Shown: piece by piece, positions 1 through 8,128 of the stretch
Position numbering within the stretch: the stretch's first letter is position 1
Layout of the letters: every line of letters starts with the position of its first letter
Origin: Prasinococcaceae sp. CCMP 1430
Lineage: Eukaryota > Plantae > Prasinodermophyta
NCBI GenBank assembly: GCA_013416795.1
Contig: RQSC01000028.1
Span: forward strand, 986,269 to 994,396
DNA length: 8,128 nucleotides
Direction of reading: 5' to 3'
Notes under the pieces: generated by a model
Databases searched by the model: none
Told to the model about the DNA's origin: nothing
The model's input: only the letters and a program-made list of their open reading frames with translations
Made by a program: the position numbers and the translations under genes

Positions 1-53
1 GGCGGCGGCGGCGCGCGCCCGCGCGGCAAGCGTCGAGCGCGGCGGGGGCGCAG

Positions 54-590
54 GTCCTAACGACCGCGGAGGCGTGCCCGTTCTGTCGCGACTACGAGGG
101 CTGCCGCGGAATTTGCCGGAACCCGCAGAACGTCGACTCCGCCGCGGCGCGTGAGGTCGTCGCCGGCGAGACGGCCGTCGAGGCGGTCCTCAAGCAGCTC
201 GAGGCGCTCGCGGCGCCGAACGAACCCAAGGTCGGCAACTGGGCGCGCGTGTGCTACCTGTTCGTCCATCCCACGCAGCGCGACCCCTTTGAGCGCTCGC
301 GGCTGTTCGGCGTGAGCAAGGACATCTACCAAGAGGACCACTTCCTCGGCGCGTTCGGCGCGCAAGCGGCGGGCCTCGTCGGGCTGGAGTCGTTCGAGCT
401 CGTCGCCGAGCGGCCGCTCAGCGACGGCCGCGTGCGAGTGGACGCGCGCGTGGTGGAGGCCATGGGCAGGGGGGAGTGGGTGTGGACTTTCGTCATGGCG
501 CCAGTCGAGGTGGGCAAGTACGCGGGGCTCTACGGCACGCTCCGCCTCCTCCGCGAGGACAGCAAGTGGCTCGAGGCGATGGCCTCGTAG
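54..590 (+). CDS. 3' part (last exon or incomplete 5' end) of an uncharacterised protein; weak resemblance to DUF4864/NTF2-like algal proteins
   Basis: The frame is open from at least 3 to TAG at 588-590. From 54 it reads VLTTAEACPFCRDYEGCRGICRNPQNVD...AVEAVLKQLEALAAPNEPKVGNWARVCYLFVHPTQRDPFER...GKYAGLYGTLRLLREDSKWLEAMAS*, with GC3-rich codons and globular composition. A possible acceptor GCGCAG lies at 48-53 and no ATG is seen in the window upstream of this region. The family resemblance (QLxAL..N-EP, terminal G.Y.G...T) is from memory, not from a search. Confidence 0.65.
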   Translation, partial: VLTTAEACPFCRDYEGCRGICRNPQNVDSAAAREVVAGETAVEAVLKQLEALAAPNEPKVGNWARVCYLFVHPTQRDPFERSRLFGVSKDIYQEDHFLGAFGAQAAGLVGLESFELVAERPLSDGRVRVDARVVEAMGRGEWVWTFVMAPVEVGKYAGLYGTLRLLREDSKWLEAMAS

Positions 591-835
591 ACACCGCGGA
601 AGCTGGTCGTTGCGACCTGCGCGCGTGCCTAGGCGCCGCGCGACTGCCTGTCTGTACGCACGCATTGCTGCACTTCAGGCTATGCGCGGCCCGTCGCCGA
701 TCCCCCTTGTGCACACGCACTTACTGTGTGCAGACAGCACCGCAGGCGCTCGCTCGCGGCGCCTCGATGGGCTCGCGCTCCTGCCGCGCCCCGGTGTAAC
801 ATCATGGTAGGACGCGCAAAAAACAAGCCTACACA

Positions 836-860
836 TACCATCTGATGGTACGTACAGTAC
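836..860 (+). promoter_or_regulatory. Palindromic GTAC-rich module copy A (TACCATCTGATGGTAC-GTAC-AGTAC), 390-414 nt upstream of the NUDC ATG; function inferred
   Basis: It is identical to the reverse complement of 4850-4870 apart from a 4-nt insertion, contains the palindrome TACCATC-T-GATGGTA, and lies in an AT-richer island with four GTAC sites in 848-868. Confidence 0.5.
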
Positions 861-978
861 ACAAGTACATTTCTATCTGATGGTGCATCAAACCGCATTG
901 TCTGTGACCGTGCCGCTGATTGCACGAGGCACGCCATCTGCATGCGTCGATAGCTGAGCTCGTGAAGAGATCGCCGGC

Positions 979-1030
979 GGGCGGGGCGGGCGGAAGGGCG
1001 GGCGGACGGGAGGGAGGGAGGGGCGGAGGG
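979..1030 (+). other. G-quadruplex-competent tract (nine runs of 3 or more G) upstream of NUDC
   Basis: GGG C GGGG C GGG CGGAA GGG C GGG CGGAC GGG A GGG A GGG A GGGG CGGA GGG fits the G3+N1-7 pattern twice over. Confidence 0.6.
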
Positions 1031-1249
1031 AGCGGCGGCGCGGTGCCACAAGACAGCCTCCCTCACCCCCTCGACACACACCATGGCCATGGCTGCCCAG
1101 GCTCTGTCCGCGAAGGCCAGCGTGCGCGGCGCGCGCGTCGCGGGCGCCGACCCGCTGCCACACCGCGCGCCCCCCGCGGCGCGCGCGCGGCGCCCTTCCT
1201 CTCTCCTTCGACCCTCTGTCGCCGCGCGTTGTCCGCACGCTCGGGCGCG

Positions 1250-2960
1250 ATGGCGGTCATCGAGGAGGTGGACGCCGCCCCGGCGGCGGCGCGCGAGCCC
1301 GCGCTCGAGGACACGCGCTCGACTCCGCACATGGACGACGAGCGCTTCGACGCGATGCTCCTCGGCGTCGCGCAGCAGCAGGAGGGCGGCATCGACGGCC
1401 TGCTCGGTGCGTGCGTGTGGCGGGAAGGGGCGCGCGCCGCGCGCCGCGTGGCCGCGTGCGGAATCGACCCGCGCGGAGTGGGGAGGGGCGCGGACGCCGC
1501 GCGCGGCCACGCGCCGCGCCGCGCACACACCTCACACACTCCCGCACTCCCGAAGAACGGGCGCACGGCTCGCTCGCGCGGCGGCCCCGGGGACGTCCTG
1601 GCGTCCGCCGCTGCCGCCGAGGTGTGGCGATGCCACGCCTCCGCATTGTCCTACACCCACCCCCACCCCCACCCGCTCCCCTTGGCGTGGCCCCCTCCTG
1701 TGTCCTGACGCGCACTCGCGCGCTCCCCCGATCGCGCGCACCCCGACCGTCGTCCGTCGGCCCGCTGATCGATCGCACAGACGTCATGTTCGGCTTCCTG
1801 CGCCGAAAGACGGACTTCTTCAGCGTGGACGCGGCGCGCGCGCGCGACGCCGTGACGTCTGCGCTCTCGCGCCAGCTCGCGCGCGTCGGCCGGGACGCCG
1901 CCGCCGCCGCCGAGGAGCGCGCCCAAAACGCGGCTCGCGACGCCGAGCGCAAGGCTGGGGCCGCCAGCAAGGCCGCCGCGCAGAGCGCCGCCCGGGAGGC
2001 GGAGGAGGCCGCGCGCAAGGAGCGCGTTGCGAAGGCGAAGGCGGAGGCCGAGGCAGCTCTGAAGGCCAAGCGGCAGGAGGACGAGGCCAAGGCAAGGGGC
2101 AAGGCGAAGGGTGCGATCTCTGCTGCGTGCGACAGCGCTCGCGCCGCGTCCGGGGCCTTGCCTCTCCCTCGTGTGTCTGACCCGCCCCCCCCCCCCCGCG
2201 CGCGTCCGCTTGTCCTTGTCCGAGCAGCGGCCGATGGGGAGCTCGAGGAGGAGGAGGCGGAGGCTGCGGACCCCGACGCGCCCGCCGCAGGCAAGGTGTT
2301 GCCGAGCGCGGGCAACGGCGGCGAGGCGGATGGATACACGTGGACGCAGACCCTCTCCGAGGTTGAGGTGCGCGTGCTCGTGCCGCAGGGCACACCGGCG
2401 CGCGCGCTCGACGTGAGGATCTCGAAGAACGCGCTCAGTGTGGCGCTCAAGGGGCAGGAGCCTATCGTGTCGGGTGACCTGAGCAAGCCCGTCGTCGTGG
2501 ACGAGTCGATGTGGAGCCTCGAAGACAAGACGTGGGTGGTTGTGACCTTCACCAAGGTTGACCAGATGTGCTGGTGGAGCTGCGTTTTGGAAGGCGACGT
2601 GGAGATCGACACGCAGAAGGTCGTGCCTGAGAATTCCAAGCTCGGTGACCTCGACGGCGAGACGCGGAGCACCGTCGAGAAGATGATGTACGACCAGCGG
2701 CAGAAGCAGATGGGTCTGCCCACCTCTGACGAGCAGCAAAAGGAGGACATGCTCAAGAAGTTCATGGCGAGGTGCGTGCGAAAAGTGCGCGAGGACCGCG
2801 TGGCGCCGCGGAGCTGTGGCGCGTCCCAGCGCGCGCGCCGGCGCGCGCTCCGAGCGCACCGCGCTGACCGTGCGCGCCGTGCGCACATCCGCTTCCCGGC
2901 CCCCGCGTCGCGACGCGAAGCCACCCTGAGATGGACTTCTCCAACGCAAAGATACAGTAA
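1250..2960 (+). CDS. NUDC: Nuclear distribution protein C (NudC), Hsp90 co-chaperone / dynein regulator; 4 exons 1250-1406, 1781-2110, 2228-2771, 2921-2960; 356 aa
   Basis: The spliced product contains the NudC N-terminal motif GGIDGLL|DVMFGFLRRKTDFF, a K/E/A-rich coiled coil, the CS/p23 domain (GNGGEADGYTWTQTLSEV...WWSCVLEGD..IDTQKVVPENSKLGDLDGETRSTVEKMMYDQRQKQMGLPTSDEQQK) and the C-terminus KFMA|SHPEMDFSNAKIQ*. Introns 1407-1780, 2111-2227 and 2772-2920 are all GT..AG with CTGAY branch-like motifs, and the phases are consistent (157+330+544+40 = 1071 nt). Confidence 0.95.
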
Positions 2961-3076
2961 GCTAACAATTCACCTCCTCCCTTCCCTCGGCTTCCCTACC
3001 GTCCGCCGACGCGTCCTCCCGAGCGCGCCGCCAGCTGCACCGCGCAAACGCGCGCGCGCGGTCCCCTCGGTCCACA

Positions 3077-4301
3077 TCAGCGCCTAGCGAAGTTGCGCAT
3101 CATGTCAGCCTTGGCTTTGCGGTCGATCGCCTCGAATTGCGACATCCACCGCTCGAGGGCGTCCACGCCGCCGCCGCCGGGCGCGCCGTAGAAGCCGCCC
3201 TCGTTCTGCGGCGGCCGCACGAGCGCGCTCTCCACGCCTGGCATCTCCGCCTCGCGCTCGGCGCGCCGCCCGGCGAGCGCTTTCCCTACGCCACCTTCGC
3301 CGCCTTCCCACGGCAGCGCCGCATGCACGCCGGGCACGTACACCTCAGGTAACACAGTGGTGTCCTCCTGCACGAGCTCCGACGCGAGGCCCGCGGCCTG
3401 TGCTGAGGTCACTCCGCCTCCGAGCACGCGCGTGAGGGCCACGTGCTCCGCGACGAGCTCCGTCTGCATGTCGCCGAGCGCGTGAAGCGCCGATGGGGCG
3501 CGGAGTCGCTGCTGCAGCGCCATGGGCGCTCCCCCCATCGGGAAGCCGAGGTCACCGCCGACTGGCCCGGCGCGTTGCAGAAGGTGCGGCACGCCCAGAT
3601 TGCGCCCCGGCGGCGGATTGACCCCCCGCGGCGCGCCGCCCCCGTCATCGGCGTGCGCGGCGGCTGCAGCCGGGTCGTACATGGCGAGCTGCGTGTTGGG
3701 CGCCGGCGCGGCGCCCGCCACCCACTGTGCCGCGGCCTTGGCGCGCGCCGCGGCGTCGCTCTCGCCTCGCGTGCCCTGCGAGTCGAGCGCGTGGGCCTCG
3801 CCTGAGGGCGGGAGGCGCTCACGCTGCGCGTTGAAGCCCCCCGCGGTGCGCTCCTCGTTGGCACTGCGCCGTGCGAGCTGGCGCTGTTCGCGCAGCACGC
3901 GCGCCTCGTCCTCGGCGTCGAGCCGCCGTTGGCGCTCCTTCTCGGCCTCTTTGGCGAGGCGTTTAGCGGCGACCTGCTCGTCGAGCTCGCGGCGCATTTG
4001 CGCGGCCTGTGGGGGCATGCGAGAGCGAGACGCACGCGAGGGGCGCGTTCGCGTGGGCGCACGCCATCGCGGGCGAGTTGTCGCGCGTCAGCGCGCGCCG
4101 ACGCGCGCGCAGCAGCAGCTCCTCCTCCCTCCCTCCCTCTCTCTGTCTCTCTGCGGCCAACCACAAGCGGCGGGGACGCTCGTGGCTCACCTTGGACTCG
4201 CGCTCGCGCCGCTCGTCCTCGCCGCCCCACATGTCAGAAATGGACTTCATGAACGGCTTGCGCGCGCCCGGCGGCGGCGAGTGCGCAGTGACGAGCGCCA
4301 T
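3077..4301 (-). CDS. Uncharacterised coiled-coil protein, 2 exons (4301-4191, 4006-3077), ~346 aa; N-terminal coil loosely resembles CCDC66/CSPP1-type ciliary motifs
   Basis: ATG at 4301 gives MALVTAHSPPPGARKPFMKSISDMWGGEDERRERESK. The donor is GTGAGC at 4190 and the acceptor CCCCCACAG ends at 4007 (184-nt, phase-0 intron). Exon 2 reads AAQMRRELDEQVAAKRLAKEAEKERQRRLDAEDEARVLREQRQL...KADMMRNFARR* to TGA at 3079-3077. The family resemblance is low-confidence inference. Confidence 0.75.
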
Positions 4302-4638
4302 GGCCCTTCGCGGCCCTGTCCCGCCACACGCACGCGCGCGTTCACACACTCTGCTTCGCTGCTGGGCCCGTCCCGCGCCGCCGTCGCGCGCCTTGGTCTC
4401 GGCCTCGGCCGCTGCCTCTCCGCTCGCGGGCGTGGCTGCGGGCGCCCGCAAGCCGGCCCGCGCCCCTACCGTTCCCCCCACGGGCCCGTCGGGCCACCGG
4501 CAGGCGTGACCGCAGAGAGGGCGGGCGGCGCGACCGAGGCAGGGCGAGCGCCTCGCCACGCACGCCGTGTGGGCCTGCGGGCGTCCACTCGGCGACGCCG
4601 TTCGCCCCGCTCCGGCTGGGCGCGCGCCCCACGCTGCG

Positions 4639-4675
4639 CCCCTCCCCCCCCACCCCATCTTCCCCCCTCCCCCCC
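4639..4675 (-). other. G-quadruplex-competent tract on the sense strand upstream of the - strand gene
   Basis: + strand C runs of 4, 8, 4, 6 and 7 nt separated by 1-5 nt. Confidence 0.55.
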
Positions 4676-4849
4676 ATGGGGGAACGCTGAGTCGCTGACG
4701 CTGAACGGCACGATTTCCCTCTCCGCTGCGCCCCTCCCCCGCGCAAGGCCTATCCCCTTTCCCCTCATGCCATTTCCGAGCCTCCCTCCGCCGCGTCGTT
4801 TCCCGACCCGCTCTGGCCCCGTCCCCAACAAGCATTTGTACCCCGGATG

Positions 4850-4872
4850 GTACTGTACCATCAGATGGTACA
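4850..4872 (-). promoter_or_regulatory. Palindromic GTAC-rich module copy B, ~550-570 nt upstream of the - strand gene ATG and adjacent to the element 1 insertion; function inferred
   Basis: rc(4850-4870) = TACCATCTGATGGTACAGTAC. It contains a perfect 19-bp palindrome TGTACCATC-A-GATGGTACA at 4854-4872, and five GTAC sites occur in 4838-4880. Confidence 0.5.
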
Positions 4873-4879
4873 GAAGGTA

Positions 4880-5752
4880 CCAACTCTGTTCCGTAAAAAA
4901 ACTAACTACGTCAAAATGCACGGGAAAAGTTGGCCGTTTTTGGCCGTAGACCCTTTTCTAGATTTCATTCGATTTGATTAGGATGACTTCGGGTCAAGGT
5001 GTGACAAATCCTAAAAAGAATTTATTTTGAATTTAGGGGTATTTACGCGCGAATATTTGCTCAGCGTCGTCCAAATATATTTCATTTTGATGTGAGATCG
5101 ACGGCTTTTACGCCTCCGATTTTCGGCAGAAAAAGCCTCTGAGCACCGGTCGACGCTCACGTTGGGCCTCGGGAGGGGTGAGGGCTGCCCCCCCCTAACC
5201 AGTCCACCGCCACGCAAGCCTCCCTACAGTCCTTGGAGACCCCCTCGATACCACTCCTCACCGGACCTCGCGCACTCTCGCGCTGTCGCGGCCAAAGAGG
5301 CGCACGTGCTTGCGTGCCGCCCACCATGCCTTGCCGTACGCCTGCGAGAGCGACACCACGACCACCCTTCCTGCTGTCCGCAGTCGCTTGACAGGCTCGG
5401 AGCCGCCCGTCCAGGCGGCTCCTTTGTCCCACTCGACCATGGAAGACCTCACGCCCCTCCCGGCGACGGCAGGCGAGCTCGAGGTCCTCGACAGCGCGCA
5501 CAGGTGCGCCTACGCACCATTCGACCCACCCAATTTTCCATGTTTTATATTGTTTTCAATCTAAGAACCGCCGCGTCCGCGGGCGCCGCGTTCGGGGCTG
5601 CCGGGCTTCGGGTTTCGAATTGCGGTTTGGTCATAACCCTAGCCGTCACAGATAAGAAGTGACGTACCGCACACGAATTTACGCGCCTTTGGGGTAAGAC
5701 CCTATCCGTATATCAAAACGAACGAGTTAGTTTTTTTACGGAACAGAGTTGG
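4880..5752. mobile_element. Non-autonomous Tc1/mariner (Stowaway-like) element, copy 1, 873 bp
   Basis: Perfect 28-bp TIRs CCAACTCTGTTCCGTAAAAAAACTAACT at 4880-4907 and 5725-5752 (reverse complement). TA flanks both ends (4878-4879, 5753-5754). No transposase ORF is present inside. The TIR start resembles the plant Stowaway/mariner consensus CTCCCTCYGTYCC. Confidence 0.9.
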
Positions 5753-5956
5753 TACATTACATTGGTAGGACTCGTACCAACTCTGTCCCGTAAAAAAACC
5801 AACTCGTTCGTTTTGATATAAGGATAGGGTCTTACCCCAATGGCGCGTAAATTCGCGTGCGGTACGTCACTTCTAATCTGTGACGGCTAGGGTTATGACC
5901 AAACCGCAATTCGAAACCCGAAGCCCGGAAGCCCCGAACGGGGCGCCCGCGGACGC
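5573..5956. repeat. Long inverted repeat (palindrome) formed by the facing ends of the two elements; arms ~183 bp including TA/GTAC, 18-nt loop at 5756-5773
   Basis: 5573-5755 is the reverse complement of 5774-5956 with 8 mismatches, by manual alignment. Confidence 0.95.
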
Positions 5957-6078
5957 CCGCGCGCGCGGAATCGCGGCCATTCGATTTGATATAGGTCGGC
6001 CGTCACGCCGCGCCCGCAGACTGTAAATCAAAATGCATTGCGTGCCACGCGCGCGCGCGCGTGCGTTTTGATGGGGGC

Positions 6079-6103
6079 CGCGCGCGCGCGCGCGCGCGCG
6101 CGC
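6079..6103. repeat. (CG)12+ microsatellite running into the assembly gap; other (CG)n runs at 6048-6061 and 7379-7397
   Basis: Read directly from the sequence. Confidence 0.95.
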
Positions 6104-6759
6104 NNNNNNNNNNNNNNNNNNNNNNNNNNNNNNNNNNNNNNNNNNNNNNNNNNNNNNNNNNNNNNNNNNNNNNNNNNNNNNNNNNNNNNNNNNNNNNNNN
6201 NNNNNNNNNNNNNNNNNNNNNNNNNNNNNNNNNNNNNNNNNNNNNNNNNNNNNNNNNNNNNNNNNNNNNNNNNNNNNNNNNNNNNNNNNNNNNNNNNNNN
6301 NNNNNNNNNNNNNNNNNNNNNNNNNNNNNNNNNNNNNNNNNNNNNNNNNNNNNNNNNNNNNNNNNNNNNNNNNNNNNNNNNNNNNNNNNNNNNNNNNNNN
6401 NNNNNNNNNNNNNNNNNNNNNNNNNNNNNNNNNNNNNNNNNNNNNNNNNNNNNNNNNNNNNNNNNNNNNNNNNNNNNNNNNNNNNNNNNNNNNNNNNNNN
6501 NNNNNNNNNNNNNNNNNNNNNNNNNNNNNNNNNNNNNNNNNNNNNNNNNNNNNNNNNNNNNNNNNNNNNNNNNNNNNNNNNNNNNNNNNNNNNNNNNNNN
6601 NNNNNNNNNNNNNNNNNNNNNNNNNNNNNNNNNNNNNNNNNNNNNNNNNNNNNNNNNNNNNNNNNNNNNNNNNNNNNNNNNNNNNNNNNNNNNNNNNNNN
6701 NNNNNNNNNNNNNNNNNNNNNNNNNNNNNNNNNNNNNNNNNNNNNNNNNNNNNNNNNNN
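6104..6759. other. Assembly gap (656 N)
   Basis: Run of N. ORFs spanning it are artefacts. Confidence 1.
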
Positions 6760-7450
6760 ACCGCCGCGCCGCCGTCGACCTGTACGGCTGGGCGCGGGAG
6801 CGGAGGCGGCCGGCCGAGGGCGTGTGAAGGGTCGAGGCACCCGCCTCAGCGGCGGCGGCGCAGATGGAGCGGATGCGTCGCCCCACCGCCACCAGCGCGC
6901 CCCCCAGCTGCTCCATCGCTGCCGCACGCGCCGCCGCACGCGCGCGCCGTGGCTGCTAGAGTCCGCGGCCGCGATTCGAAACCGCGGGCGAGCGGGAGCG
7001 CCTAAACCCGAAGTCATCTTAATCAAATCGAATGAAAGCTAGAAAAGGGTCTACGGCCAAAAACGGCCAACTCTTACCGTGCATTTTGACGTAGTTGGTT
7101 TTTTTACGGGACAGAGTTGGTAGTATGGACAGGGTTAGCCCGAGATCGCCAACCCCAAACATGGCGCTCTGATTTGTCAGGGTTCACTCCACTCCACGCG
7201 TGCTGCAATAGGCAATTGGCAATTGACTCGACGAGCGGATGGCGCGCGCGCGCGTGGCGCGGCGGTGCGATGCGGCGCGGCGGGACGCGGGGGGCGGCGC
7301 CACACGAGTAAACCGTCTGCATATACGGAAAAGCCGGACGCACCATCATTTACTACCGCGGAAGTGCCGAAAAGTAGTGCGCGCGCGCGCGCGCGCGAGG
7401 GGGGTGGAAAATATATCAATCCTAATGGTGTGCTTTCGCGTGGCGCTGCG

Positions 7451-8089
7451 CTACGCGCTCGCGCTCTCGAGCGCCGCGAGCTCGTCTGCCGTCGCCGTGA
7501 TGGGCGCGAGGTCCTCTGCGGGGAAGTCGCTGTGGTGGGGCAGCTTGAAGTCATTGCCCCGTCCGCGGCGATGATCGAGCGCAGGATGAGCGACTTGTAA
7601 CGCCATGCCCGCTCGAGGGTTTGACTGTCGTACCGCTGCCACTCGGCGGCCACCGCTGCCACAAGCCGCGCCTTGTTCGCCGTTGGCAGCCGCGAGACGC
7701 GGCATGCGAGCGACCTGTTGAAGCACAGGTCGAGGACGTTGGTGTCCGGTGAGTTGGGCGGCTGGCGCGTGATGTCGATGCTCATGCGCCGCCCAACGCC
7801 CGCCGCGCGAAGCGCGTCCTCCGCGCCCTTGCCCGTGTGCGCTGACGCGCCGTCGTTCTTCTTGGCGGCATAGTAGAGCGTCCGCACGTACTTGGCCGTG
7901 TACCCCTTGCTCGGGTGGTTGTACTCGGCCGTGCGGCGCGCCGCCCGGGCGAAAATGTCCGCCCACGATGCCTCCGGGTCGGCGTTGCGCTCCTGCTCGA
8001 CGACGAGCAGCGCGTTGAAGCGCTTCGCCTGCTGCGGGGGCGGGCCCGCCGGCGCCGCCGCCGCGATTGCGGCCGCGCTGGCGCTTCAT
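7451..8089 (-). pseudogene. Degenerate mariner-like transposase of the DD39D (plant mariner/Osmar/Soymar1-type) group; D2-D3 spacing here is 40
   Basis: The - strand frame contains DGASAH (D codon 7854-7852), IDITRQPPNSPDTNVLDLCF (D codon 7731-7729) and WQRYDSQTLERAW...IIAADG. After a 1-nt shift at the C4 run 7557-7560 it continues GNDFKLPH...*(7453-7451). These match the QDNAxxH / QPPNSPDxNVLD / GGNxYKxPH motifs of DD39D transposases. The first catalytic D region is absent and there is no in-frame ATG (TGA at 8088-8086 in this frame). The 5' boundary is uncertain. Confidence 0.88.
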
Positions 8090-8128
8090 ACCCTTGAAAT
8101 CTCTCATTCTTTGCCGATCTGCCTGCGG

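What the first reader, a model, noticed from the sequence alone, without database searches (positions are those of the whole stretch)
836..4870. Same 21-bp palindromic GTAC module upstream of both complete genes, in the same orientation, and next to the transposon landing site
Seen: 836-860 (TACCATCTGATGGTAC[GTAC]AGTAC) equals rc(4850-4870) (TACCATCTGATGGTACAGTAC) except for a 4-nt insert. Both read 5'->3' on the sense strand of the nearest downstream gene (NUDC ATG 390-414 nt away; - strand gene ATG 549-569 nt away). Both sit in small TA-rich islands with 4-5 GTAC sites in an otherwise TA-poor, GC-rich background. Each island has extra half-copies (ATCTGATGGT 875-884; GATGGTAC 4846-4853), and TGGTAGGAC occurs at 805-813 and again at 5763-5771, part of island B before the insertions. 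Inference: this is a short dispersed palindromic repeat family, either a core promoter/TF module or a mini mobile element, and mariner elements use it as a preferred target, loosely like IS elements targeting bacterial REP palindromes. I do not recognise it as a described element.
Basis: partly seen in the sequence, partly recalled or inferred. Interest (0 to 1): 0.8.

Follow-up and report, generated by a model that had tools for sequence, protein, structure and literature searches.

The report
Recurrent promoter-island palindrome beside mariner hot spot
Two gene-upstream AT-rich islands in the very GC-rich green alga Prasinoderma coloniale share an exact palindromic GTAC-flanked motif, probably a protein-binding site, and the few TA sites beside it have been hit repeatedly by mariner transposons; genome-wide proof is still missing.

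Summary
TACCATCTGATGGTAC is exact at 836-851 (+) and 4855-4870 (-). No composition-matched shuffle of the two islands shared a word longer than 12 nt.

The window is Prasinoderma coloniale (69.8% GC). Wild Tara/Logan alleles add four points:
- Island A normally carries the full 17-nt palindrome GTACCATC-T-GATGGTAC, and one haplotype shares an exact 22-mer with island B.
- The 4-nt GTAC "insert" is polymorphic.
- Both mariner copies, and the transposase-bearing element at 7311-8128, are absent from wild alleles. The empty sites confirm the TA duplications.
- One TA 12 nt from palindrome B has two different footprint-like alleles of the form TA-C...G-TA.

The basic unit is the half-site GTACCATC, with degenerate extra copies in each island. 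Three first-reader notes on other windows of this genome (unchecked) report the same palindrome in upstream or divergent spacers, so the scan found it before on other DNA.

Best reading (about 0.5): a dimeric protein-binding cis-element in TA-rich promoter islands. In a TA-starved genome these islands are the natural landing pads for TA-targeting mariners.

Not supported: "same orientation" (the core is a palindrome), core-promoter status (it lies at least 170-320 nt upstream of known RNA), and a mini mobile element. Motif-specific targeting is unproven, because 24% of all TA sites lie in the two islands.

The parts
836..851 (+). Island A core: a palindrome of 7+1+7 nt (836-850) plus C851, giving the 16-mer shared with island B. 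Wild alleles have G at 835, which completes a 17-nt palindrome, GTACCATC-T-GATGGTAC.
848..868 (+). Run of GTAC sites (848, 852, 857, 865) directly after palindrome A. This is the hypervariable block. The 4-nt unit at 852-855 is polymorphic. Haplotypes read GGTA-CAG-TA-CAC, GGTA-CG-TA-CAC, or both units as here.
871..886 (+). Degenerate second copy of the unit in island A (TTCTATCTGATGGTGC, 13/16 identical). Its right arm is conserved in all haplotypes.
795..806 (+). TGTAA (795-799) and the 3' end of the upstream gene's RNA contigs (777 and 806). The palindrome starts 30 nt further on.
   Evidence: TGTAA as the green-algal poly(A) signal is from general knowledge
4853..4873 (.). Island B core: a perfect palindrome of 10+1+10 nt, CTGTACCATC-A-GATGGTACAG.
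4836..4880 (-). Island B module read on the gene-2 strand. It is made of 9-nt units: GTACCTTCT, GTACCATCT, GATGGTACA, GTACCATCC, then GGGGTACA. Equivalently, an 18-nt unit is repeated twice (15/18 identical). The module is invariant in all 8 alleles that carry it.
4878..5754 (+). Mariner-like non-autonomous copy 1 (4880-5752) with TA duplication at 4878-4879 and 5753-5754. It inserted at a TA 7 nt from the 17-nt palindrome and is absent from wild alleles.
5758..5767 (+). Footprint-like 8-nt addition (TA-CATTGG-TA) at a TA 12 nt from the palindrome. Five wild alleles lack it. Two others carry a different addition at the same TA; read on the minus (gene-2) strand, as, it is TA-CAG-TA.
   Evidence: footprint rule from PMC1925063 and PMC9632168
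5775..7122 (-). Mariner-like copy 2 (5777-7120, with an assembly gap), inverted relative to copy 1. TA duplication at 5775-5776 and 7121-7122. Absent from wild alleles.
1250..2959 (+). NUDC-like gene (CS domain). Exons 1250-1405, 1780-2109, 2227-2769 and 2919-2959 are confirmed by RNA contigs. Known RNA begins at 1168-1174.
3077..4301 (-). Gene 2, with no recognised domain. Exon 1 is 4301-4191 and exon 2 is 4006-3077. The splice is inferred from GT..AG and from an intron-less relative (L005).
7311..8128 (-). Frameshifted mariner-type transposase remnant (third element). A 95% identical copy exists in another metagenome contig (L170). It is absent from wild alleles L176 and L177.

Best explanation
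The module is a short palindromic protein-binding site with half-site GTACCATC. Its best form is GTACCATC-W-GATGGTAC, and degenerate extra copies lie beside it. It sits in the small TA-rich, probably nucleosome-free island of intergenic regions that contain a promoter in Prasinoderma coloniale.

The most likely binder is a dimeric transcription factor or general regulatory factor. The two GTAC cores 13 nt apart also make an SBP-type factor a candidate.

The genome is about 70% GC and poor in TA, so these islands hold a large share of the TA sites that mariner-like elements need. The elements therefore insert and excise there repeatedly. That makes the flanks hypervariable and rich in TA-C...G-TA units, that is, in GTAC. 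The palindrome's interior contains no TA and stays intact.

Shown here: the recurrence, the allele series, the empty sites and the footprint-like alleles. Inferred: protein binding, the promoter role and open chromatin.
For: - Exact 16-mer at two islands; no composition-matched shuffle came near it.
- Wild haplotype L176 shares an exact 22-mer between islands A and B.
- In the transposon-free sequence the only AT-rich islands are A, B and the convergent 3' region. A and B are the two that face a promoter and both carry the motif. The two convergent spacers examined lack it.
- The motif core is unchanged in four island-A haplotypes. The whole module is unchanged in eight island-B alleles.
- Half-sites occur in inverted and direct arrangement at 9- and 18-nt spacing, like a cluster of same-type binding sites.
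- Unchecked first-reader notes place the same palindrome in three upstream regions and in divergent spacers on other pieces of the genome.
- P. coloniale has SBP-box factors, which bind GTAC cores (PMC7455551).
- Only 66 TA sites occur in 5.9 kb, and 24% lie within 35 nt of the palindromes.
- Empty sites and two footprint-like alleles at one TA document repeated mariner visits.
Against: - No binding, chromatin or start-site data exist.
- The motif lies at least about 170-320 nt upstream of known NUDC RNA. Its distance to gene 2 varies by about 130-150 nt between alleles.
- Two island-B alleles (L178, L002) lack an intact module, apparently without loss of the gene.
- Another promoter-side island (L173) has no palindrome, and a short divergent spacer in L172 has no AT-rich island and no palindrome.
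- The outer TA-CCA...TGG-TA equals the TA duplication plus the ends of the resident mariner, and the half-site is 7/8 identical to the junction G-TA-CCAAC. This hints at a transposon origin.
- The contrast between the conserved core and its variable flanks (16/17 against 12/53 invariant columns) may be automatic. TA-targeting elements cannot hit the TA-free interior, and background divergence is only about 2%.
- No genome-wide count could be made.
Confidence: 0.5

Rival explanations
1. Transposon relic. The palindrome is what remains of a mariner-like element after excision or internal deletion: a TA duplication plus a few terminal bases of each inverted repeat. The same relic recurs wherever that subfamily visited, and it has no function of its own. 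The adjoining AGTAC is a second small footprint (TA-CAG-TA).
For: - The outer bases TA-CCA...TGG-TA match the duplication and ends of the resident mariner (CCAAC...GTTGG).
- GTACCATC is 7/8 identical to the junction GTACCAAC.
- The motif sits in DNA full of documented insertions and TA-C...G-TA units.
- TA-CAG-TA arose independently at another TA in island B (L186, L187), and this unit varies between island-A haplotypes.
- L173 has an island with TACCAGGTA-type strings.
Against: - Published plant mariner and Stowaway footprints keep 1-4 nt per side and differ from event to event (PMC1925063, PMC9632168). The alleles here do the same (CG, CAG, CCAATG).
- An identical 11-nt interior at several loci does not fit that variability.
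- The arms need CCATC, but the resident element has CCAAC, and no element with CCATC ends was found.
- No allele shows the bare TA.
- The motif is older than the haplotype split.
Confidence: 0.22
2. 3'-end or transcription-termination (roadblock) element. A bound factor or structure just past the poly(A) site of the upstream gene stops read-through into the next gene in a compact genome.
For: Palindrome A starts 30 nt after the end of the upstream gene's RNA contig (806), which follows a TGTAA at 795-799. Both islands lie in head-to-tail spacers.
Against: The two convergent (3'-3') spacers seen lack the motif. An unchecked note reports it concentrated in divergent spacers, which have no 3' ends. 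Upstream of island B, wild alleles have no gene or transposase at the place where this strain has one.
Confidence: 0.1
3. Sequence-specific landing pad. The palindrome, or a protein bound to it, actively guides mariner integration to the neighbouring TA sites. This is the first reader's REP/IS-like idea, and it also resembles Sap1-guided Tf1 integration in fission yeast.
For: Three or four independent events lie within 21 nt of palindrome B. Island A is hypervariable right at the palindrome's TA. P(three events within 25 nt) = 0.002 under uniform choice among TA sites.
Against: Only one island carries insertions. The events may be linked, for example by local hopping from the footprint site. 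TA scarcity alone gives P=0.06 for two hits near a palindrome. No other insertion sites of this element could be fetched: the terminal-repeat scan of metagenomes found none.
Confidence: 0.15

Closest known systems
GTAC-core copper response elements bound by SBP-domain factors (CRR1 in Chlamydomonas, SPL7 in Arabidopsis)
   Same: Clusters of GTAC cores in short upstream stretches of a green-lineage genome that encodes SBP factors (PMC7455551).
   Different: The recurrent unit here is longer (GTACCATC as an inverted pair) and includes bases SBP binding does not need. The bases before GTAC vary (G, C, A, T) rather than the preferred CGTAC or CCGTAC. The genes are not known copper targets. Nothing about binding was tested.
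General regulatory factor sites in nucleosome-free promoter regions of compact genomes (Reb1, Abf1, Rap1 in yeast)
   Same: A short, high-information, often palindromic site recurring in promoter-containing spacers between closely packed genes. It could also act as a roadblock for upstream transcription.
   Different: No factor is known, no chromatin data exist, and the copy number is unknown.
Tc1/mariner and Stowaway excision footprints
   Same: TA duplication with 1-4 terminal bases between. The 8-nt and 5-nt alleles at one TA, and the CG-TA and CAG-TA units after palindrome A, fit this form.
   Different: The palindrome itself has an 11-nt interior that is identical at different loci. Its arms differ by one base from the resident element's ends.
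Bacterial REP palindromes used as targets by some IS elements
   Same: Short extragenic palindromes next to which mobile elements are found.
   Different: This is a eukaryote, no REP-associated transposase is involved, and mariner needs only TA. Association beyond TA availability is not shown.
Sap1-guided integration of Tf1 at fission-yeast promoters
   Same: Insertions fall a few to about 20 nt from a protein-binding motif in promoter nucleosome-free regions.
   Different: Tf1 is an LTR retrotransposon with a known tethering factor. Here the resemblance rests on one island only.

Membership tests
Transcription-factor / regulatory-factor binding motif | The same motif recurs at many unrelated promoters, more often than chance | tested here: inconclusive
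   Two copies in this window, far beyond chance. Other copies are known only from unchecked notes. The genome could not be scanned.
Transcription-factor / regulatory-factor binding motif | Positional preference relative to the transcription start | tested here: inconclusive
   At least about 170-320 nt upstream of known NUDC RNA. Distances to the gene-2 ATG are 549-569 nt here and about 690-700 nt in L001. No start-site data exist for gene 2.
Transcription-factor / regulatory-factor binding motif | Kept across alleles or species while the flanks change | tested here: inconclusive
   Core 16/17 invariant against 12/53 in the flanking block. The flanks change by TA-targeted events that cannot hit the core. 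No other species covered the site.
Transcription-factor / regulatory-factor binding motif | A protein binds it specifically | not testable with these tools
   Needs DAP-seq, EMSA or footprinting.
MITE / mini mobile element of the Tc1/mariner kind | Terminal inverted repeats long enough to bind transposase, typically with a total length of 50 bp or more | tested here: not met
   The whole unit is 15-21 bp.
MITE / mini mobile element of the Tc1/mariner kind | Presence/absence alleles with a single TA at the empty site | tested here: not met
   All four island-A haplotypes and eight island-B alleles carry it. The two alleles lacking it (L178, L002) are larger rearrangements, not a bare TA.
Mariner excision footprint | TA duplication enclosing 1-4 terminal bases per side, variable between events | tested here: met
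   This holds for the small units only: TA-CCAATG-TA (window) and TA-CAG-TA (L186, L187) at the same TA, against none in five alleles.
Mariner excision footprint | The same rule applied to the palindrome itself | tested here: not met
   The 11-nt interior is identical at two loci, and at more by the notes. The arms read CCATC, not the resident CCAAC.
SBP / copper-response GTAC cluster | Several GTAC cores in a short upstream stretch, and SBP factors in the genome | tested here: met
   4 and 5 GTAC sites where about 0.5 is expected. SBP is listed for P. coloniale.
SBP / copper-response GTAC cluster | Copper-dependent regulation of the genes; SBP binding | not testable with these tools
   No expression or binding data were available here.

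The most novel reading that the evidence does not exclude
Promoter islands of this TA-starved genome are programmed or self-reinforcing transposon landing pads. There are two versions. In the first, a factor bound to the conserved palindrome channels mariner integration to the adjoining TA sites. In the second, repeated mariner excision, which always leaves TA-C...G-TA, itself writes the GTAC clusters and perhaps the palindrome, so that transposon traffic creates candidate SBP-type binding sites at promoters.
Probability: 0.12. Interest if true: 0.7.

Novelty: new member of a known kind. Interest (0 to 1): 0.42.

Why it matters
Prasinoderma coloniale represents a third, early-branching phylum of green plants, and nothing is published about its promoters. 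The literature searches run here turned up no described motif of this kind.

A high-information palindrome that marks promoter islands would be a first handle on its transcriptional regulation and a practical part for building expression tools.

The allele series from ocean metagenomes also shows live mariner traffic, with insertions, empty sites and alternative footprints, concentrated on the few TA sites beside the motif. That is a clean natural example of how base composition and chromatin funnel transposons into promoters. If only a handful of copies exist, the finding is a local curiosity.

Tried and rejected
- **Metagenome scan for the mariner terminal repeat (23-mer):** no match, so no further insertion sites could be obtained.
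- **Scans for TACCATCWGATGGTAC:** 44 hits in viral contigs and 120 rows (capped) in metagenome contigs. Almost all are AT-rich chance or coding matches. L147 is an unrelated 9-bp satellite. L075 is a possible relative but could not be identified.
- **Using the transposase as a hook to sample the genome:** only two relatives exist in the protein collection, both on short contigs.
- **Exact look-up of the gene-2 open reading frame:** not on record. It was reached instead through homologues and cluster members.
- **Literature search for the motif strings:** only primer noise. No paper links Prasinoderma with a GTAC motif beyond the SBP remark.
- **RNA families and tRNA search:** nothing in the islands. 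The microRNA-model hits at 5704-5825 are the tail-to-tail terminal repeats and score below threshold.
- **Cruciform or hairpin idea:** island B folds better than shuffles as single-stranded DNA (z = -4) and island A does not (z = -1.1). The stems are too short to argue for a structural role.
- **A third palindrome copy at 797-809 and the shared TGGTAGGAC:** rejected, because both are strain-specific variants.
- **A degenerate old mariner end at 7126-7139 (10/12 match):** chance level.
- **The cross-species test failed:** the related-species contig L005 does not reach either island.
Full report
**1. Observation**

The window is 68.7% GC. The 16-mer TACCATCTGATGGTAC is exact at 836-851 on the plus strand and at 4855-4870 on the minus strand.

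In island B the palindrome is longer: 10+1+10 nt at 4853-4873. Island A in this strain has 7+1+7 nt at 836-850.

The match is not chance. No composition-matched shuffle of the two islands (3000 trials) shared a word longer than 12 nt, and a palindrome of 21 nt never arose.

GTAC is not enriched in the window as a whole (24 against 21.6 expected), but it is clustered:
- 4 in island A (0.51 expected);
- 5 in the ancestral island B (0.44 expected).

**2. Organism and genes**

The gene ending at 590 is 100% identical to EukProt PRCOL_00000199 of Prasinoderma coloniale. Published figures for that genome are 25.3 Mb, 69.8% GC, 7,139 genes, 6.5% repeats and SBP-box factors present (PMC7455551). The DNA runs that hold the window are probably the mutation-accumulation lines of PMC11884799, to judge by their year and number.

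RNA contigs confirm the NUDC-like gene with a CS domain. They show the splices 1405/1780, 2109/2227 and 2769/2919.
- Known NUDC RNA begins at 1168-1174.
- None of the listed RNA contigs covers 807-1167; bin depth is zero over 888-1031, and the small depths at 1032-1167 come from contigs that were not listed.
- The upstream gene's RNA ends at 777 or 806, just after a TGTAA at 795-799.

Palindrome A therefore lies 30 nt past a poly(A) site and at least about 170-320 nt before the NUDC start. It is not a core promoter element. Gene 2 (minus strand, ATG at 4301) has no informative RNA cover.

**3. Anatomy**

The recurring unit is the half-site GTACCATC / GATGGTAC. There are four exact copies in the window, where about 0.1 is expected, and all lie in the two islands.

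Island B, read on the gene-2 strand, is GTACCTTCT GTACCATCT GATGGTACA GTACCATCC GGGGTACA. That is an 18-nt unit repeated twice with 15/18 identity. Island A has the perfect copy and a 13/16 copy 35 nt further on, at 871-886.

After the transposons are removed, the only AT-rich islands (60-nt windows under 50% GC) are A, B and the convergent 3' region at 2911-2994, which has no motif.

**4. Wild alleles**

Cluster members of the two flanking proteins gave Tara Oceans and Logan contigs of the same locus.

*Island B*
- Five alleles (L001, L176, L177, L181, L184) carry the module without either mariner copy. Each has a single TA where this strain has copy 1 (4880-5752) and copy 2 (5777-7120). These are two independent insertions with true TA duplications.
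- At the TA between the two insertion sites, the five alleles read TCC-TA-ATG. This strain reads TCC-TA-CCAATG-TA-ATG. L186 and L187 read TCC-TA-CAG-TA-ATA.
- So one TA has two different additions of the form TA-C...G-TA. This fits published plant mariner and Stowaway footprints: a TA duplication plus 1-4 terminal bases per side (PMC1925063, PMC9632168).
- L178 has foreign AT-rich sequence joined inside the second unit, and L002 is replaced upstream.
- The transposase-bearing element at 7311-8128 is also missing from L176 and L177.

*Island A*

Four haplotypes all keep TACCATCTGATGGTAC. Two of them have G at the position of 835, giving the full 17-nt palindrome. The next 20-45 nt differ by many insertions and deletions. 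Directly after the palindrome the alleles read:
- GGTA-CAG-TA-CAC (L176, L186);
- GGTA-CG-TA-CAC (L172 type);
- GGTA-CG-TA-CAG-TA-CAC (this strain).

L176 shares an exact 22-mer with island B.

The string TGGTAGGAC, cited as a shared feature, is strain-specific in both places.

**5. What the allele series does and does not show**

Within the island-A block, 16 of 17 palindrome columns are invariant against 12 of 53 for the rest (Fisher P = 1.6e-7). Outside the block, 109 of 120 are invariant.

I do not read this as proof of selection. The flanks change through TA-targeted events. The palindrome's interior has no TA. Events at its two outer TAs leave the 15-mer core intact, and any footprint of the C...G form would rebuild the flanking GTAC; that the footprints take this form is itself an inference. 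Background divergence is only about 2%.

**6. Is the motif a mariner target?**

The transposon-free 5.9 kb holds only 66 TA sites, and 16 (24%) lie within 35 nt of the two palindromes. Under uniform use of TA sites:
- two insertions near a palindrome have P = 0.059;
- three events near a palindrome have P = 0.014;
- three events within 25 nt of one another have P = 0.002.

There is a local hot spot. However, the events may be linked, for example by excision from the footprint site and re-insertion 5-9 nt away. The preference could be for a TA-rich open island rather than for the motif. No further insertion sites could be fetched.

**7. Is the motif dispersed?**

I could not scan the genome.

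Three first-reader notes on other windows of the same genome report the same palindrome: "in three upstream regions", "concentrated in divergent intergenic spacers", and possibly an oriented 16-bp motif in four promoters. They are unchecked AI notes. They are simple sequence observations, and they argue against a purely local duplication. If the report of copies in divergent spacers holds, it also argues against a 3'-end role.

In the extra DNA fetched here:
- a second convergent spacer lacks the motif (L172);
- a promoter-side island upstream of PRCOL_00000199 (L173) has TACCA-type strings but no palindrome;
- a short divergent spacer in L172 has no AT-rich island and no palindrome.

The motif is therefore not universal.

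**8. Mechanism**

*Best reading (about 0.5).* A dimeric protein-binding cis-element in TA-rich promoter islands. Mariner traffic in the flanks is a consequence of TA scarcity and probably of open chromatin.

*Main rival (about 0.2).* A transposon relic.
- For it: TA-CCA...TGG-TA equals the duplication plus the ends of the resident element, and GTACCATC is 7/8 identical to the junction GTACCAAC.
- Against it: real footprints are short and vary from event to event, the arms need CCATC where the resident element has CCAAC, no such element was seen, and no allele shows a bare TA.

*Also considered.* A termination or roadblock role (about 0.1) and active guidance of integration (about 0.15).

**9. 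Comparison and novelty**

The closest known kinds are listed under Closest known systems:
- GTAC-core SBP/copper-response clusters;
- general regulatory factor sites in compact genomes;
- mariner footprints;
- by analogy only, REP/IS and Sap1/Tf1 targeting.

No defining feature of a mobile element was met. The binding-site features could not be tested decisively. No description of this motif was found in the library searched.

I rate it a new member of a known kind, with moderate interest. The wild-allele series is the most solid new result.

Noticed in passing
window 4880-5752, 5777-7120, 7311-8128; L001, L176, L177, L181, L184: All three transposon insertions upstream of gene 2 in the reference strain are absent from Tara Oceans alleles of the same locus. 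The family has therefore been active since the strain's lineage split from the sampled wild populations.
   Followed up: partly
window 4727-4814; L001 160-470; X1 contig: The stretch between island B and gene 2 is structurally polymorphic. This assembly has 88 nt where a DNA-run contig has 19 nt and Tara alleles have about 310 nt. The breakpoints lie at poly-G/poly-C tracts, so some of this may be assembly error.
   Followed up: no
L178 1-48: One Tara allele has unrelated AT-rich sequence joined inside the second unit of the island-B module (after ...AGTA). This is probably another insertion at the same hot spot. The contig ends too soon to identify it.
   Followed up: no
L176 4330-4420 (island A variable block): The variable block holds CACTAGTCACTAGTG, which contains the small palindrome CACTAGTG. 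L173 has a similar string, CCACTAGTAC. This may be a trace of a second transposon family with CACTA-type ends.
   Followed up: no
L173 461-567: An AT-rich island about 330-430 nt upstream of the PRCOL_00000199 start has three TACCA strings, including TACCAGGTA. That string has the exact form of a mariner footprint (TA-CCA-GG-TA). There is no palindrome.
   Followed up: partly
L172 1-2096 versus L173 1-972: Two metagenome contigs agree at 99.9% over the last exon of PRCOL_00000199 and island A, but are unrelated upstream of one sharp point (L172 2097). This is either a structural variant or a chimeric assembly.
   Followed up: no
L147 (WNGL01049674.1) 1-3990: An unrelated metagenome contig carries 4 kb of a 9-bp satellite, GTACCGTCC, with GTACCATCC variants and strand switches. 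The 16-mer arises at one switch. It is a look-alike, not a relative.
   Followed up: yes
L075 (VFQN01031757.1) 440-480, 770-815, 1380-1460: A 59% GC non-coding eukaryote-like contig has three GTAC clusters. One holds GTACCATCAGATGGTAT, matching island B at 21/22 and island A at 18/18. It may come from a related alga, but the organism was not identified.
   Followed up: partly
window 5704-5825: The tail-to-tail mariner ends form a long hairpin that draws several microRNA-model matches. All score below their gathering thresholds, so they are false positives.
   Followed up: yes
L170 734-1297: A 95% identical copy of the transposase remnant sits next to an open frame that, by eye, looks like a bacterial-type ABC-transporter ATPase, on a 1.3-kb metagenome contig. 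This could be a chimera or a transferred gene.
   Followed up: no
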